From: Scyliorhinus canicula | Lineage: Eukaryota | Assembly: GCF_902713615.1 (NCBI RefSeq) | Contig: NC_052172.1 | Span: 19,005,327 to 19,069,326, forward strand | Length of the DNA: 64,000 nucleotides | Reading direction: 5' to 3' | Part shown: piece by piece, positions 27,910 to 63,598 of the stretch | Position numbering within the stretch: position 1 is the stretch's first letter | How the letters are laid out: the number at the start of each line of letters is the position of its first letter | Notes under the pieces: model-generated | Told to the model about the DNA's origin: nothing | Databases searched by the model: none | Seen by the model: the letters and a program-made list of their open reading frames with translations, nothing else | Position numbers and translations under genes: made by a program

Positions 27910-28142
27910 TCAAAGTTCCCCTTTCTTCTCGCTGCAGTCCACGCAGACCCTGACTGGATGGTCCCACCCCCGCGAGGGTACTGGCCTCAGCTCTGGGGAG
28001 CACTGGCTGCAGAAGCCTAGGCCACAGGCCCGGCAGTGGTGTTTTGCCGTCGTCCCAGCGAAGGGCTTCTCACAGTGGTGACACTTGACGAGCTCGTGGT
28101 CTGGCACCCAGTAATCCGGCCTCGCCACATCCTTGACGATCC
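27910..28142 (-). CDS. ZFYVE1-like exon 11, FYVE domain 2 and stop
   Basis: IVKDVARPDYWVPDHE...AKHHCRACG...VPSRGWDHPVRVCVDCSEKKGEL*; 233 nt; joined CDS is 1947 nt with consistent phases. Confidence 0.95.
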
Positions 28143-28749
28143 CTGGGCAAAACAGCAACCGGCAAAATATTAGAACAAAACAACACTCATCATTAGCCAC
28201 CTCTCACAACGCGTTCCTCGTCCTTACTGGGTAACGACTGCCCTGGGCACCAGCCTCTGCCAACTTGGCGAGCAGCGACTAGGAACGCGAGCAGGCTATT
28301 CACCAATAGAAGGCATCACAGTCCTGTTCGACAGACATAAACGCAGAAAAACACACAGCTGGCATAACAATCAGGACTCATCCTGGTTTCCAAACCCCTC
28401 CACCGTCTTTCCCCATCGCATCTCCGTAACCTCCTGCCGGGCCCCAACACTCACAAGATCACCGCGCTCCTCCAGTTCTGGCCTCTTTCACAGTCACGAC
28501 CTTAAATAGGTGGCACTGCCCTGGGTTGCCTGGGCGCTCAGCTCTGGAATCCCCTCCCGTAAATCTCTCCGCCTCTCTCTCTCTCCTTAAAAGTGACCCT
28601 TTAAAAGCTCCCTTATTGACCACATTTTGGGTCATCTGATCTAATAACGCCTTAAGTAGCTCAGTGATGATTTGTAATGCTTCTGTAAAGCACCTGGGAA
28701 GTATGTTTGAACAAGTTTTACAAAGTAACTTTAATAAATGTAATATATA

Positions 28750-28975
28750 GGGCAGCATGGTGGCGCAGTGGTTAGCACTGCTGCCTCACGGCGCTGAGGT
28801 CCCGGGTTTGATCCCGGCTCTGGGTCACTGTCCGTGTGGAGTTTGCACATTCTCCCCGTGTCTGTGTGGGTTTCTCCCCCACAACCCAAAGATGTACAGG
28901 GTAGGTGGATTGGCCACGCTAAATTGCCCCTTAATTGGAAAAATAAAGAATTGGGTACTCTAAATTTACTTTTTT
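28750..28975 (+). mobile_element. HE1/V-SINE-like
   Basis: consensus. Confidence 0.9.
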
Positions 28976-29109
28976 AAATAAACGTATATGCAAATATTGC
29001 AATTGGCTCAAATTCTCTGGCAAAACTATTTCCCCACATCTTAGGGTGCAGCTTATAACTCCGAGTTTGGGGGAGGGGGGGGCAGACAAACAAGGTTGGC
29101 TGTACCTAC

Positions 29110-29220
29110 CGAGGGGATATTCGACTGCTGAAGTCATGGCATCCAGCGTGCTCTGCGCCACTTCGGTAATCCTGCGAGCCATTAGCCCCCTGCCTTCCCT
29201 GGCTGCCTCCAGCTGCTTTC
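29110..29220 (-). CDS. ZFYVE1-like exon 10, inter-FYVE linker
   Basis: GLMARRITEVAQSTLDAMTSAVEYPLG resembles human TLIARKVGEAVQNTLGAVVTAIDIPLG; 111 nt, phase 1 to 1. Confidence 0.9.
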
Positions 29221-29291
29221 CTGCAACATCAACAAAATGGACAAAATCAAATGATCCTTGGGTCAAAGATTATTCACCGTCACGTCCAGCA

Positions 29292-29530
29292 TTTTTTATT
29301 TTATTTATTTATTTCATTTAGTGTACCCAATTAATTTTTTCCAATTAAGGGGCAATTTAGCCTGGCCAATCCACCTACTCTGCACATCTTTGGGTTGTGG
29401 GGGTGAAACCCACACAGCCACAGGGAGAATGTGCAAACTCCACACGGACAGTGACCCAGAGCCGGGATCGAACCTGGGACCTCGGTGCCGTGAGGCAACA
29501 GGGCTAACCCACTGCGCCACCGTGCTGCCC
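29292..29530 (-). mobile_element. HE1/V-SINE-like
   Basis: consensus; TSD CACGTCCAGCA. Confidence 0.9.
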
Positions 29531-29796
29531 ACGTCCAGCACTTATTACGCCTCCTTAATTTCCCTTGCCAGGGCGTTGGTGAGCCCCCTTCAAGTAGCTT
29601 GCTGGCCGTATCAGAGGGGCAATTAAGAACAAAGAAAATTACAGCACAGGAACAGGCCCTTCGGCCCTCTAAGCCTGTGCCGATCCAGATCCTTTATCTA
29701 AACCTGTCGCTTATTTTCCAAGGATCTACTTCCCTCTGTTCCCCGCCCGTTCATATATCTGTCTAGATGCATTAAGAGTCAACAACATTGTTGTAA

Positions 29797-60462: not shown

Positions 60463-61026
60463 GGTTACAGCGATAGGGAGGGAGGACATGGAGGAATTAC
60501 AGAGATAGGGAGGGAGGGAGGAAATGGAGGGAGATTACAGAGCTAGGGAGGGAGGGAGGATATGGAGGGATTACAGAGATAGGGAGGGGGGAGGAGGGAT
60601 TACAGAGATAGGGAGGGAGGGAGGAGGGATTACAGAGATAGGGAGGGAGAGAAGGAGGAGGGATTACAGAGATAGGGAGGGAGGGAGGAGGGATTACAGA
60701 GATAGGGAGGGAGGGAGGAGGGATTACAGAGATAGGGAGGGAGGGAGGAGGGATTACAGAGATAGGGAGGGAGGATATGGAGGAATTACAGAGATAGGGA
60801 GGGAGGGAGGACATGGAGGGTGATTACAGAGATAGGGAGGGAGGGAGGACATGGAGGGTGATTACAGAGATAGGGAGGGAGGGAGGACATGGAGGGTGAT
60901 TACAGAGATAGGGAGGGAGGGAGGACATGGAGGGCAATTACAGAGATAGGGAGGGAGGGAGGACATGGAGGGAGATTACAGAGATAGGGAGGGAGGGAGG
61001 ACATGGAGGGTGATTACAGAGATAGG
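60463..61026 (+). repeat. purine-rich minisatellite (GATTACAGAGATAGGGAGGGAGGGAGGACATGGAGGG...)
   Basis: 30-37 bp units; a single related L2-like segment lies at about 61638-61715. Confidence 0.93.
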
Positions 61027-61269
61027 CCAGGATCGAACCCGGGTCCTCGGCGCCGTGAGGCAACAGTGCTAACCCGGGCCCTCGGCGCCGTGAGGCAACA
61101 GTGCTAACCCGGGCCCTCGGCGCCGTGAGGCTGCAGTGCTCACCCGGGTCCTCGGCGCTGTGAGGCAGCAGTGCTAACCCGGGTCCTCGGCGCCGTGAGG
61201 CAGCAGTGCTAACCCGGGTCCTCGCCGCCGTGCGGCAGCAGTGCTAACCACTGCGCCACCGTGCCGCCC
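61027..61269 (-). mobile_element. tRNA-SINE head with a 35-bp internal segment repeated six times
   Basis: AACCCGGGTCCTCGGCGCCGTGAGGCAGCAGTGCT x6 between box B-like and box A-like ends. Confidence 0.9.
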
Positions 61270-62473
61270 CTTGGAACCTCTGATTTTAAATGTGACGTAT
61301 TCTGCAGTCAGGAGCCCTGTGGGTCAGTGAGCATGGATGGGGTGATCAGAGAGTGCAGGAGCCCCTAACAATGTGGCTCAGACTCATAGAAGGTTCCAGC
61401 ACACAAGGAAGCCATTCAGCCCATCGTGCCCATGTTGGCCCTTTTAGAAAGTTATCCAATTAAGTTCACTTCCCCGCTAACCCGCCCCCATTCCCAACCC
61501 CTGTGCGAGCACAGAGAGAGAGAGCGAGAGGGAGCCGGTACCCAGGCTGATTCCCCGAGGGAGTGAGGGCTGCCCCTGGTGGCGATTCAAGTGAATGTCA
61601 AAGTGCCGCTACCTCGGAGGGTTTGCGTGGTGTGACGGAGATTGCAGAGATGGGGGGGGGGGGTGGAGCGGAAGCGAGGCCACGGAGGCATTTGAAAACG
61701 AGGAAGGGATTTTAAAAAAATCGAGCATTCACATTCCCTTCCTTGTCCATCCCACTCCTACCTTGCCTATTCCTGCCTCCCTCACGACAGCGGAGAAATT
61801 AATTTAGAGGCAAGCTTGTTTAAACTACCACTATGATCCTTGATTAAATCCACCTACCACCCTTCAACTCCTCTCACGGTTCTTTAGATTTCATTCCTTC
61901 TGCACACGTTTTTATTTTTAACCTTCGCCAATTCCGCCCACTCGTCTTCTCATCTACTTTTACAAATGTTTGATCCCACACAATAGCTTTGCAAAGTCAT
62001 CAACCTGCGGTGGTTTAAACAAGCGGTTGCTCCTCCTCGTCCTGTTTGACCGAATCGATATCGGCACAAAGGTCCCCAGTGGGTGAAAATTCGGACAAAT
62101 CCCTCCTTGGTTCTCATCCCTCCCCTATCTCTGGAAGCTCCCGCCCCAAAATCTCCAGGCACCTCCGGGATGGAGGGGGTTGGCCCTCTCGAGGAGAATG
62201 CGGGGCCTGGGGCCAGGACGAGAGGGGATCTGATTGAAACCTGAGGGCAGAGAGGCTAGTTTGAGGAAACTAGGCCGCACACAGCCCCAGGATAAGGGGG
62301 CGGCCATTTTGGACCGAAGGCGAGGAGGAATTTCTTCACTCGCTGAGGAGTTGCAAACTTATTTACTCCAGAGAGCGTGTGGACGCCCGGTCGTTCTGAC
62401 TCTGAAACTCCAGCGATCACTGAAGGGGAGCTGCACTGTCAGCAGTGCCGACTTTTGGATGAGGCGTTAAACT

Positions 62474-62696
62474 TTTTTTAATGTAAATTTAGAGCACCCA
62501 ATTTTTTCCAATTGAGGGGCAATTTAGCATGGTCGATCCACCTACCCTGCACATCTTTGGGTTGTGGGGGCGAAACCCACGCAGACACGGGGACAATGTG
62601 CAAACTCCACACGCACAGTGACCCAGAGCCGGGATCGAACCTGGGACTTCGGCGCCGTGAGGCAGGAGTGCTAAACACTGCACCACCGTGCTGCCC
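62474..62696 (-). mobile_element. HE1/V-SINE-like inserted in a DeuSINE-like copy (about 62410-62960)
   Basis: 17-bp TSD GGATGAGGCGTTAAACT. Confidence 0.88.
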
Positions 62697-63250
62697 GGAT
62701 GAGGCGTTAAACTGAGTCCCCCTTTCAGGTTGGCGGTAAAAGAAGGAGATCTCCCCCCTCCCCCGACTAATACTTATCCCTCACCCGCCATCCCTAACCC
62801 AGATTATTTGGTCATTTCTTGCATGGTTGTTTATGGGATCTCGCTGTGCACTCCCTGCGATACGACAGTGACCATGCTGCACAGAAAATACTTTTATTCG
62901 CTGGAAGGCACGTTGAAATATCTCGGGTCGTGGTCGGCGCTACGCAAAGGCAGGACTCTCTTCATACTCGAGACGGACATTGGGACATTGGAGGAAAACA
63001 GGGAATATGGAGATGAGGCAGGTGGTTGACCGTGATCTGATCAGGCAGTGGTGCAATCTCGGGTGGGGGGGGGGGGGGGGGGGGGGGTGGGGGGGGCGGG
63101 GGGGGGCCTGAGGCGCAGTGACCTCTCGGGTTAAATCACCGCCAGTCAGCTCCCTCTCTCGAAAGCCTATGGGCGCGATTCTCCGCCTCCCACGCCAGGT
63201 GGGAGAATAGCGGGAGGGCCTCCCTCAGTACTGACCCTCTGGCAGTGCGG

Positions 63251-63438
63251 CAATTAAGGGGCAATTTAGCGTGGCCAATCCACCTACCCAGCACATCTTT
63301 GGGTTGTGGGGGCGAAACCCACGCAGACACGGGGAGAATGTGCAAACTCCACACGGTCAGTGACCCAGAGCCGGGATCGAACCTGGGACCTCGGTGCCGT
63401 GAGACTGCAGGGCTAACCACTGCGCCACCGTGCTGCCC
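63251..63438 (-). mobile_element. HE1/V-SINE-like
   Basis: consensus. Confidence 0.85.
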
Positions 63439-63490
63439 TTCTGTCAGATATTTTGACCAAAGTGAAATATCTAACCTCTGTTTCGTCTAG

Positions 63491-63598
63491 GATTGGCCCC
63501 CGGACAGTTATATACCTACCCAGCTCGATGCTGGCGGAAGAAGAGACGCCTAAATATCCTGGAAGACCCAAGGCTAAGACCCTGTGAAATTAAACTTG
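63491..63598 (+). CDS. DPF1: DPF1 next exon
   Basis: [36 protein letters not shown]; TAG acceptor, G|GTAAAA donor; phase fits the previous exon. Not in the ORF track. Confidence 0.93.

What the first reader, a model, noticed from the sequence alone, without database searches (positions are those of the whole stretch)
27910..63598. Intact second ZFYVE1/DFCP1 gene next to DPF1: a probable whole-genome-duplication paralog absent from humans
Seen: an 11-exon, frame-consistent 648-aa ZFYVE1-like CDS with intact P-loop GNTGDGKS (47544-47567), DTEG and two FYVE fingers, lying beside DPF1 exons. Known (recalled): humans have one ZFYVE1, next to DCAF4 and DPF3 on chr14, and none beside DPF1 on chr19. 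Inference: this is the sister copy from the DPF1 paralogon, not the ZFYVE1 ortholog, so this animal would have a second PI3P-binding omegasome/lipid-droplet NTPase. It is clearly more diverged from human ZFYVE1 than the DPF1 exons are from human DPF1.
Basis: partly seen in the sequence, partly recalled or inferred. Interest (0 to 1): 0.8.

Follow-up and report, generated by a model that had tools for sequence, protein, structure and literature searches.

The report
Catshark's second, shorter DFCP1 (ZFYVE1) gene
This catshark gene is a real, intact sister copy of the autophagy and lipid-droplet protein ZFYVE1/DFCP1 that sharks, bony fishes and amphibians have kept and no reptile, bird or mammal showed in my search; public databases already annotate it, but I found no paper that names or studies it.

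Summary
On the minus strand there are 11 GT-AG exons (51557 to 27910). They encode 648 aa with the P-loop GNTGDGKS, DTEG and two FYVE fingers. The protein is letter-for-letter NCBI XP_038641957.1 (Scyliorhinus canicula "ZFYVE1 isoform X2").

All exons lie left of the 500-N gap, so the gap does not touch the reading frame. The gap sits in satellite DNA between this gene and DPF1 exons 2 and 3 on the plus strand, head to head.

- A maximum-likelihood tree gives two gnathostome-wide clades, each 100/100. One is canonical ZFYVE1 with an N-terminal B-box (sharks to mammals). The other is a ~650-aa form without the B-box (sharks, ray, sturgeon, bichir, gar, teleosts, coelacanth, amphibians; no amniote seen).
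- A shark-only duplication is rejected (AU p = 0.00014).
- The neighbouring exons are DPF1-type: 98% identical to human DPF1, 89% to DPF3, 80% to DPF2.
- The same head-to-head pairing occurs in S. torazame, Hemiscyllium and a catfish. A seahorse's canonical ZFYVE1 sits beside a DPF3-type gene.

So this is a block duplicate consistent with whole-genome duplication. It is not new: it is annotated widely (fish entries carry the name si:ch211-11n16.2), though no paper was found. Not shown here: the canonical copy in S. canicula itself, the cyclostome state, and splice junctions by reads.

The parts
51462..51557 (-). Exon 1 of the ZFYVE1-like gene. The ATG is at 51557 and the exon gives 32 aa. An in-frame stop lies 9 codons upstream, with GA-rich sequence rather than a splice acceptor.
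   Evidence: The N-terminus is the same as in XP_038641957.1. Orthologs in Mustelus, Pristiophorus, Discoglossus and Neoarius start at the same point.
47138..47642 (-). Exon 2, the core of the GBP/atlastin-like NTPase domain, with the P-loop GNTGDGKS (47567-47544) and DTEG.
   Evidence: Pfam GBP scores 21.5 bits on the whole protein. Held at a 0.81-1.00 share of sampled words in 14 RNA-labelled runs.
43339..43556 (-). Exon 3, the end of the NTPase domain.
42611..42717 (-). Exon 4.
41518..41626 (-). Exon 5, in the Cys-rich central region that aligns to the human ER-binding domain.
40061..40158 (-). Exon 6.
38715..38832 (-). Exon 7. An alternative acceptor at 38790 gives isoform X5.
35153..35323 (-). 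Exon 8.
31649..31829 (-). Exon 9, the first FYVE finger. An alternative donor at 31664 gives the 643-aa isoform X4.
   Evidence: Pfam FYVE 4e-16.
29110..29220 (-). Exon 10, the linker between the FYVE fingers. An alternative acceptor adds three residues (DVA) in isoforms X1, X3 and X5.
27910..28142 (-). Exon 11, the second FYVE finger and the stop codon.
   Evidence: Pfam FYVE 5e-19.
52288..55116 (.). 33-bp satellite array of 86 copies, running up to the edge of the gap.
55117..55616 (.). Assembly gap (500 N) in the intergenic region between the two genes. It probably hides DPF1 exon 1. I did not fill it.
   Evidence: The DPF1 product annotated in this assembly is only 338 aa and starts at the internal Met at 57170, against 389 aa in S. 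torazame.
55954..56752 (.). The same 33-bp satellite in inverted orientation, 24 copies.
57095..57256 (+). DPF1 (neuro-d4) exon 2.
   Evidence: PDB DPF2 residues 12-65, E 1.7e-27. It is 98% identical to human DPF1 and 89% to human DPF3.
63490..63598 (+). DPF1 exon 3.
   Evidence: PDB DPF2 residues 65-95. It is 33/36 identical to human DPF1 and 29/35 to human DPF3.

Best explanation
What it is: the small-spotted catshark member of an old vertebrate sister gene of ZFYVE1/DFCP1. Fish entries in UniRef call this gene si:ch211-11n16.2, and NCBI labels it 'zinc finger FYVE domain-containing protein 1(-like)'.

Origin: a block holding at least a ZFYVE1 gene and a DPF gene was duplicated before cartilaginous and bony vertebrates split. 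This fits the early vertebrate whole-genome duplications. One copy, ZFYVE1 beside DPF3, survives in all jawed vertebrates sampled. The other copy, this gene head to head with DPF1, survives in sharks, rays, ray-finned fishes, coelacanth and amphibians, and was not seen in amniotes.

Likely function (inferred from human DFCP1, not shown here): the protein keeps the GBP/atlastin-like P-loop NTPase domain, the central ER-binding region and the two C-terminal FYVE fingers, but has no N-terminal B-box/Ring-like domain. It most likely works as an ER- and lipid-droplet-associated, PI3P-binding NTPase that dimerises on nucleotide binding.
For: Shown here:
- Intact gene: an 11-exon GT-AG open reading frame identical to XP_038641957.1.
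- Transcription: exon 2 is held at a 0.81-1.00 share in 14 RNA-labelled runs of 7 studies, against 0.13-0.29 for the surrounding 5.3 kb.
- Conservation: 95.4% identity to the S. torazame ortholog, but only about 60% to that species' canonical ZFYVE1.
- Phylogeny: two clades, each 100/100. A single clade of all shark sequences is rejected.
- Breadth: 99 of 116 full-length hits are of this type, with a median length of 651 aa and a short N-terminus.
- Domains: Pfam finds two FYVE fingers plus GBP and no ANCHR-like B-box. The canonical shark and mole proteins do have the B-box. No Cys-rich open frame other than the two FYVE exons and repeats turned up in any frame of the window.
- Alignment to human: Foldseek aligns residues 16-637 to human ZFYVE1 145-777 at 60% identity, E 1.5e-76. 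The next matches are GBP5, SEY1 and RHD3, and in the PDB GBP-like proteins, RNF112, GBP2, atlastin-1 and SMG9.
- Catalytic residues: the P-loop octet is identical to the human one. Its T189, G190, K193 and S194 are the residues shown by mutation to be needed for ATP binding or hydrolysis (PMC10329651).
- Synteny of this copy: the neighbour is DPF1-type. The same head-to-head pair occurs in S. torazame, Hemiscyllium and Ameiurus. A YIF1-family gene lies next to it in Discoglossus and a NUMB-family gene in Tetraodon.
- Synteny of the canonical copy: in Hippocampus it is followed by a DPF gene whose exon 1 reads MAAVIQNPLKA. That is DPF3-like, compared with MATVIHNPLKA in human DPF3 and MATVIPGPLS in human DPF1.
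Against: - The canonical ZFYVE1 of S. canicula itself was not retrieved; only congener and other shark copies were.
- No lamprey, hagfish, amphioxus or tunicate sequence is in the tree, and the single outgroup (a scorpion) has a long branch. The duplication is therefore dated only as older than crown gnathostomes.
- Whole-genome duplication rests on microsynteny of a few genes, not on a chromosome-scale analysis.
- Function is inferred from human DFCP1. The ER-binding region is modelled with low confidence (pLDDT under 50 for residues 302-438).
- Absence in amniotes is absence among the best 120 database hits.
Confidence: 0.9

Rival explanations
1. It is simply the catshark ortholog of human ZFYVE1, fast-evolving and with its first exon lost in the gap.
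For: NCBI gives it the same name as the canonical gene. A gap lies 3.6 kb upstream of the ATG. The canonical copy of S. canicula itself was not retrieved here.
Against: The congener S. torazame has a separate 782-aa B-box ZFYVE1 on another record. That protein groups with mammalian ZFYVE1 and is 74.8% identical to the mole protein, against 58.6% for this gene. Orthologs in four other species start at the same short N-terminus, so the missing B-box is not an artefact of the gap. The neighbour is DPF1, not DPF3.
Confidence: 0.03
2. It is a duplicate made within cartilaginous fishes, or separately in several lineages, rather than one ancient duplication.
For: None beyond the general frequency of lineage-specific duplicates.
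Against: The short-form clade holds sharks, a ray, ray-finned fishes, coelacanth and amphibians in roughly species-tree order. The AU test rejects a single clade of all shark sequences (p = 0.00014). The DPF1 adjacency is shared by sharks and a catfish.
Confidence: 0.02
3. The two genes come from an old small-scale (segmental) duplication of a ZFYVE1-DPF block, or from a duplication older than vertebrates, not from the vertebrate whole-genome duplications.
For: Only a few linked genes were examined. The orientation differs between the pairs: ZFYVE1 then DPF3 on one strand, against this gene head to head with DPF1. No cyclostome or invertebrate chordate is in the tree.
Against: DPF1 and DPF3 are themselves vertebrate paralogs that sit in the human 19q13 and 14q24 regions (established knowledge, not tested here). 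NUMB-family and YIF1-family genes also flank the short-form gene. An earlier scan note places QPCTL and FBXO46 (human 19q13) 2.7 Mb away on the same piece (unchecked).
Confidence: 0.12
4. It is an expressed pseudogene or a decaying copy with no function.
For: It has lost the N-terminal domain found in human DFCP1.
Against: The frame is open through 11 exons with canonical splice sites. Every tested catalytic and FYVE motif is kept. The protein is 95.4% identical between two catsharks and conserved across some 90 species clusters. Exon 2 is enriched in RNA-derived contigs. Human DFCP1 112-777, which lacks the same domain, still localises to lipid droplets (PMC9881219).
Confidence: 0.02

Closest known systems
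Human ZFYVE1/DFCP1 (Q9HBF4)
   Same: The P-loop octet is the same, as are the GBP/atlastin-like NTPase fold, the central ER-binding region and the two C-terminal FYVE fingers. The alignment is collinear over human 145-777 at 60% identity.
   Different: It lacks the first ~125-130 residues, the Ring-like/ANCHR-like B-box domain. It belongs to the sister clade, not the ortholog clade. It lies next to DPF1 instead of DPF3.
Annotated but unstudied orthologs: 'si:ch211-11n16.2' (UniRef name on gar, tilapia, Astyanax and other fish entries) and NCBI 'ZFYVE1-like' of frogs, caecilians, coelacanth and sharks
   Same: Same clade, same length (median 651 aa), same short N-terminus and, where seen, the same DPF1 neighbour. 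The S. canicula entries XP_038641956-61 are this very gene.
   Different: Nothing of substance. This window is one more member, and it carries the canonical name in NCBI.
GBP, atlastin, Sey1/RHD3, RNF112 and SMG9 G domains (dynamin-related large GTPases)
   Same: The fold of residues ~20-280 matches (Foldseek E 1e-9 to 1e-6, 14-21% identity). The Atlas feature search also points to GBP.
   Different: Sequence identity is low. There are FYVE fingers instead of helical stalk or transmembrane parts. Human DFCP1 hydrolyses ATP as well as GTP (PMC9881219, PMC10329651).
DPF1 / neuro-d4 (the neighbouring gene)
   Same: Exon 2 is 53/54 and exon 3 is 33/36 identical to human DPF1.
   Different: Exon 1 is not in the assembled sequence. 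The product annotated in this assembly starts at an internal Met.

Membership tests
ZFYVE1/DFCP1 family (broad sense) | P-loop NTPase domain with GNTGDGKS (human T189, G190, K193, S194) and DTEG | tested here: met
   The octet is identical. G58, N59, G61, G63, K64 and S65 are invariant in 40 homologs. Pfam GBP scores 21.5 bits against a cut-off of 21.1. The fold matches GBP and atlastin. The residues' roles come from PMC10329651.
ZFYVE1/DFCP1 family (broad sense) | Two C-terminal FYVE fingers | tested here: met
   Pfam FYVE gives two stretches, E 3.8e-33 for the whole protein.
ZFYVE1/DFCP1 family (broad sense) | Central ER-binding domain (human 415-553) | tested here: inconclusive
   The region aligns collinearly with the human protein and has conserved Cys/His columns. 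The model is of low confidence there, and membrane binding cannot be tested.
ZFYVE1/DFCP1 family (broad sense) | N-terminal Ring-like / ANCHR-like B-box domain (human 1-111) | tested here: not met
   There is no PF22586 hit in P0136, P0133 or P0148, whereas P0214 and P0226 have one. No Cys-rich open frame other than the FYVE exons and repeats turned up in the window. An in-frame stop lies upstream of the ATG.
Ortholog of human ZFYVE1 (canonical clade) | Groups with mammalian ZFYVE1 in a tree and lies beside DPF3 | tested here: not met
   It falls in the sister clade at 100/100. The neighbour is DPF1-type.
Short ZFYVE1 paralog (si:ch211-11n16.2 group) | Clade membership, ~650 aa, short N-terminus, head to head with DPF1 | tested here: met
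   It carries the short-clade state at all 5 columns fixed differently between the two clades.
Short ZFYVE1 paralog (si:ch211-11n16.2 group) | PI3P binding, nucleotide hydrolysis, ER/omegasome/lipid-droplet localisation | not testable with these tools
   Inferred from human DFCP1 only (PMC9881219, PMC10329651, PMC10761139).
DPF1 / neuro-d4 (neighbour) | N-terminal DPF1-3_N sequence closer to DPF1 than to DPF3 or DPF2 | tested here: met
   Named DPF1/neuro-d4 proteins are 93-100% identical and named DPF3 proteins 83-89%. DPF2 is 43/54 identical. Exon 3 is 33/36 against 29/35.

The most novel reading that the evidence does not exclude
The form without the B-box may be the older architecture. The scorpion homolog and an arthropod cluster in the Atlas show no Pfam B-box either. 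On that reading amniotes lost the ancestral-type DFCP1 and kept only a derived copy that gained the B-box. In fishes and amphibians the two copies would then split or back up DFCP1's roles. That could mask phenotypes in zebrafish or Xenopus zfyve1 knock-outs, and it would bear on why ZFYVE1 loss spares bulk autophagy.
Probability: 0.25. Interest if true: 0.5.

Novelty: already known. Interest (0 to 1): 0.3.

Why it matters
DFCP1 is the standard marker of omegasomes and is studied as a single-copy gene. Zebrafish (judging by the clone-style gene name carried by other fish entries), Xenopus (hit) and all the other non-amniote jawed vertebrates sampled carry a second copy without the B-box. Databases label that copy with the same or a placeholder name. 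Knock-out, expression or antiviral studies of 'zfyve1' in fish and frogs can therefore confuse the two genes or be buffered by the second one. The short copy is also a natural experiment on what the N-terminal B-box adds. For genome evolution it is one more ohnolog pair (ZFYVE1-DPF3 and ZFYVE1-like-DPF1) retained outside amniotes, which is common and not surprising.

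Tried and rejected
- The search of protein representatives with exon 2 gave only 11 weak hits and no vertebrate ZFYVE1. That blank was misleading, because the search for homologous proteins later returned hundreds.
- A PDB sequence search with exon 2 gave no hit, so no DFCP1 structure is in that copy.
- AlphaFold on exon 2 alone gave pLDDT 35.6 and was discarded.
No splice junction was checked with reads.
- The look-up of encoding contigs had no record for P0136, P0214 or P0241, because only the longest isoform is kept.
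- Earlier scan notes hold no ZFYVE1, DPF3, DPF1 or SIPA1L3 entry elsewhere in this genome.
- Paper searches for zfyve1 paralog names, for ohnolog and for ch211-11n16.2 found nothing relevant. Peptide strings of DPF1 and DPF3 found nothing.
- The second FYVE gene next to the Tetraodon ortholog raised the idea of a tandem origin. I rejected it because the two copies are near-identical to each other and both of the short type.
- My recollection of a human R266Q mutant was not borne out by the paper and was dropped.
- No fragment of a canonical S. canicula ZFYVE1 was found among the exon-2 hits.

Full report
**The gap, tested first.** The window has one N run, 55117-55616. The ZFYVE1-like coding sequence runs on the minus strand from 51557 to 27910, wholly to the left of it. 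No exon, frame or splice junction therefore depends on the gap. The gap sits in intergenic satellite DNA. A 33-bp unit is repeated 86 times from 52288 up to the gap's edge. After the gap and 337 bp of unique sequence, the same unit runs in inverted orientation from 55954 to 56752. The gap matters only for the linkage to the DPF exons on its right, and for anything hidden inside it. I did not fill it.

**The observation.** I rebuilt the gene from open frames and splice signals alone. I obtained 11 exons, all GT-AG, with no stop, giving 648 aa. Using an alternative exon-9 donor gives 643 aa. The reverse complement of 47544-47567 reads GNTGDGKS, and DTEG follows in the same exon. Pfam finds FYVE fingers in exons 9 and 11. 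The 648-aa model is letter-for-letter XP_038641957.1 and the 643-aa form is XP_038641960.1, both 'zinc finger FYVE domain-containing protein 1' isoforms of Scyliorhinus canicula. The CDS span on record for that gene in GCA_902713615.2 is 23,648 nt, exactly 51557 minus 27910 plus 1.

**Evidence that the gene is used.** A cruder index does help. Exon 2 alone is held at a 0.81-1.00 share of sampled words in 14 RNA-labelled runs from seven studies. The 5.3-kb stretch around it, mostly intron, is held at 0.13-0.29 in such runs. That pattern is what a spliced transcript gives. The protein is 95.4% identical to its S. torazame counterpart. NCBI lists five isoforms that differ only at alternative splice sites I had also found.

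**What the protein is.** With an alignment of 40 homologs, AlphaFold models residues ~20-290 and both FYVE fingers with confidence, but not the central region. Foldseek aligns residues 16-637 to human ZFYVE1 residues 145-777 (60% identity, E 1.5e-76) and residues 1-637 to mouse 126-777. The next matches are GBP5, SEY1 and RHD3, and in the PDB a GBP-like interferon-inducible protein, RNF112, GBP2, atlastin-1 and SMG9. Pfam on the whole protein gives two FYVE stretches and GBP at threshold.

Human DFCP1 is described as a Ring-like N-terminal domain (1-111), an NTPase domain, an ER-binding domain (415-553) and tandem FYVE fingers (PMC9881219). Residues T189, G190, K193 and S194 of its P-loop are needed for ATP binding or hydrolysis, and ATP binding drives dimerisation (PMC10329651 and PMC10761139). 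The catshark protein keeps that octet unchanged.

It lacks the N-terminal domain. There is no ANCHR-like B-box hit, whereas the canonical shark and mole proteins have one. An in-frame stop and GA-rich sequence lie just upstream of the ATG. No Cys-rich open frame other than the two FYVE exons and repeats turned up in any frame of the window. Orthologs in Mustelus, Pristiophorus, Discoglossus and Neoarius begin at the same short N-terminus, so the absence is a property of the gene, not of the gap.

**Ortholog or paralog.** A word-index search with exon 2 and a second search with the Pristiophorus protein returned hundreds of vertebrate proteins. I built a careful maximum-likelihood tree of 36 full-length sequences with a scorpion outgroup. 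It has two clades, each supported 100/100.
- Clade A holds B-box proteins of three sharks, four teleosts, a frog, two turtles and two mammals.
- Clade B holds ~650-aa proteins of six cartilaginous fishes (including this window), sturgeon, bichir, gar, five teleosts, coelacanth, a salamander, two caecilians and four frogs, in roughly species-tree order.

S. torazame, Oreochromis niloticus and Leptobrachium leishanense each have one protein in each clade. Forcing all cartilaginous-fish sequences together costs 209 log-likelihood units (p-AU 0.00014). The shark canonical protein is 74.8% identical to the mole's, while this window's protein is 58.6% identical.

Of 116 full-length hits, 99 are of the short type (median 651 aa). 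All four amniote entries are canonical. An amniote short-type protein should have outscored those entries and been listed. The duplication therefore predates the split of cartilaginous and bony vertebrates, and the short copy is missing from the amniotes sampled.

**The neighbour and the join across the gap.**
- *Identity of the neighbour.* The plus-strand exons at 57095-57256 and about 63490-63598 match DPF2 residues 12-65 and 65-95 in solved BAF complexes. They are exons 2 and 3 of a d4-family gene in the right order. Named DPF1/neuro-d4 proteins are 93-100% identical to exon 2 (human DPF1 98%), and named DPF3 proteins 83-89% (human 89%). Human DPF2 is 43/54 identical. Exon 3 is 33/36 identical to human DPF1 against 29/35 to DPF3. 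The gene is DPF1.
- *Independent support for the join.* In S. torazame and Hemiscyllium ocellatum the short ZFYVE1 gene has a DPF-family gene on the opposite strand, with the two start codons 7.1 and 6.2 kb apart. In the catfish Ameiurus melas the distance is 4.5 kb, and that neighbour (P0275) is of the neuro-d4 type. A chance misjoin would not recreate this conserved head-to-head pair.
- *The other copy.* In Hippocampus the canonical B-box gene is followed on the same strand by a DPF gene whose first exon reads MAAVIQNPLKA. That resembles human DPF3 (MATVIHNPLKA), not DPF1 (MATVIPGPLS).
- *Wider neighbourhood.* A YIF1-family gene follows the short copy in Discoglossus and a NUMB-family gene flanks it in Tetraodon. 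An earlier, unchecked scan note puts QPCTL and FBXO46, human 19q13 genes, 2.7 Mb away on the same piece.

Each ZFYVE1 copy thus travels with its own DPF copy. This is a block duplication, as the early vertebrate genome duplications would produce.

**What the gap probably hides.** The DPF1 product annotated in this assembly has 338 aa. Its CDS starts at window 57170, an internal Met of exon 2. The S. torazame and Hemiscyllium products have 389 and 374 aa. I found no exon-1-like open frame between 51.6 and 57.1 kb. In S. torazame the two start codons are 7.1 kb apart, whereas here exon 2 is already reached at 5.5 kb. DPF1 exon 1, and likely a shared promoter, therefore lie in unassembled sequence that is probably longer than 500 bp.

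**How it most likely works.**
- *Shown:* the domain content, the conserved catalytic and FYVE motifs, the fold class, transcription and long-term conservation.
- *Inferred from human DFCP1:* nucleotide-dependent dimerisation of the NTPase domain, anchoring in the ER through the central domain, and PI3P binding by the FYVE fingers at omegasomes and lipid-droplet contacts. Human DFCP1 112-777, which lacks the same N-terminal domain, still localises to lipid droplets, so a protein without the B-box can plausibly perform these core steps. What the missing B-box adds is unknown.

**Novelty.** The gene is annotated in this genome and in well over 90 other sequence clusters. Fish entries carry the clone-style name si:ch211-11n16.2, and NCBI often gives it the same name as canonical ZFYVE1. 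I found no paper that names the paralog, the gene id or a second DFCP1. It is known to databases, unstudied in the literature I could search, and of an ordinary evolutionary kind.

**What remains open.** The canonical copy in S. canicula itself, the state in cyclostomes and invertebrate chordates, whether the B-box was gained or lost (the scorpion homolog and an arthropod Atlas cluster show none), and direct read support for the junctions.

Noticed in passing
window 55117-57256: DPF1 exon 1 is missing from the assembled sequence. The DPF1 product annotated in this assembly (338 aa) starts at the internal Met at 57170, against 389 aa in S. torazame. The gap probably hides exon 1 and a promoter shared by the two genes, and is likely longer than 500 bp.
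   Followed up: partly
window 45137-47151: A 20-bp minisatellite of 97 copies overlaps the exon-2 donor at 47138. The reverse complement of its unit carries GTGAGT, so intron 2 opens with about a hundred donor-like sites. Another first-stage note (s1-213867) also records this.
   Followed up: partly
window 20018-22717, 32911-34995, 52288-55116, 55954-56752: One 33-bp satellite forms four arrays. One lies inside intron 8 of the ZFYVE1-like gene. Two lie in inverted orientation on either side of the gap, a layout that is likely to break assemblies.
   Followed up: partly
L002 2527-6127 and 10001-13550 (Tetraodon nigroviridis): Two near-identical tandem copies of the short ZFYVE1 gene lie 7.4 kb apart. 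This is either an artefact of the draft assembly or a very recent tandem duplicate.
   Followed up: partly
P0246 (Centruroides vittatus) and the Atlas arthropod cluster of 736 aa: Arthropod ZFYVE1-like proteins show two FYVE fingers and a GBP-like domain but no Pfam B-box. The B-box of human DFCP1 may therefore be a vertebrate gain rather than an ancestral feature.
   Followed up: partly
window 35859-37694: A long, imperfect low-complexity repeat lies in intron 7. It is open in several frames (up to 587 aa of Leu/Ser-rich or Arg/Glu-rich translation) and shows no sign of coding.
   Followed up: no
tool behaviour: The exhaustive representative search returned no vertebrate ZFYVE1, although the word-index search of the same collection returned hundreds. 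A blank from the former should not be read as absence.
   Followed up: yes
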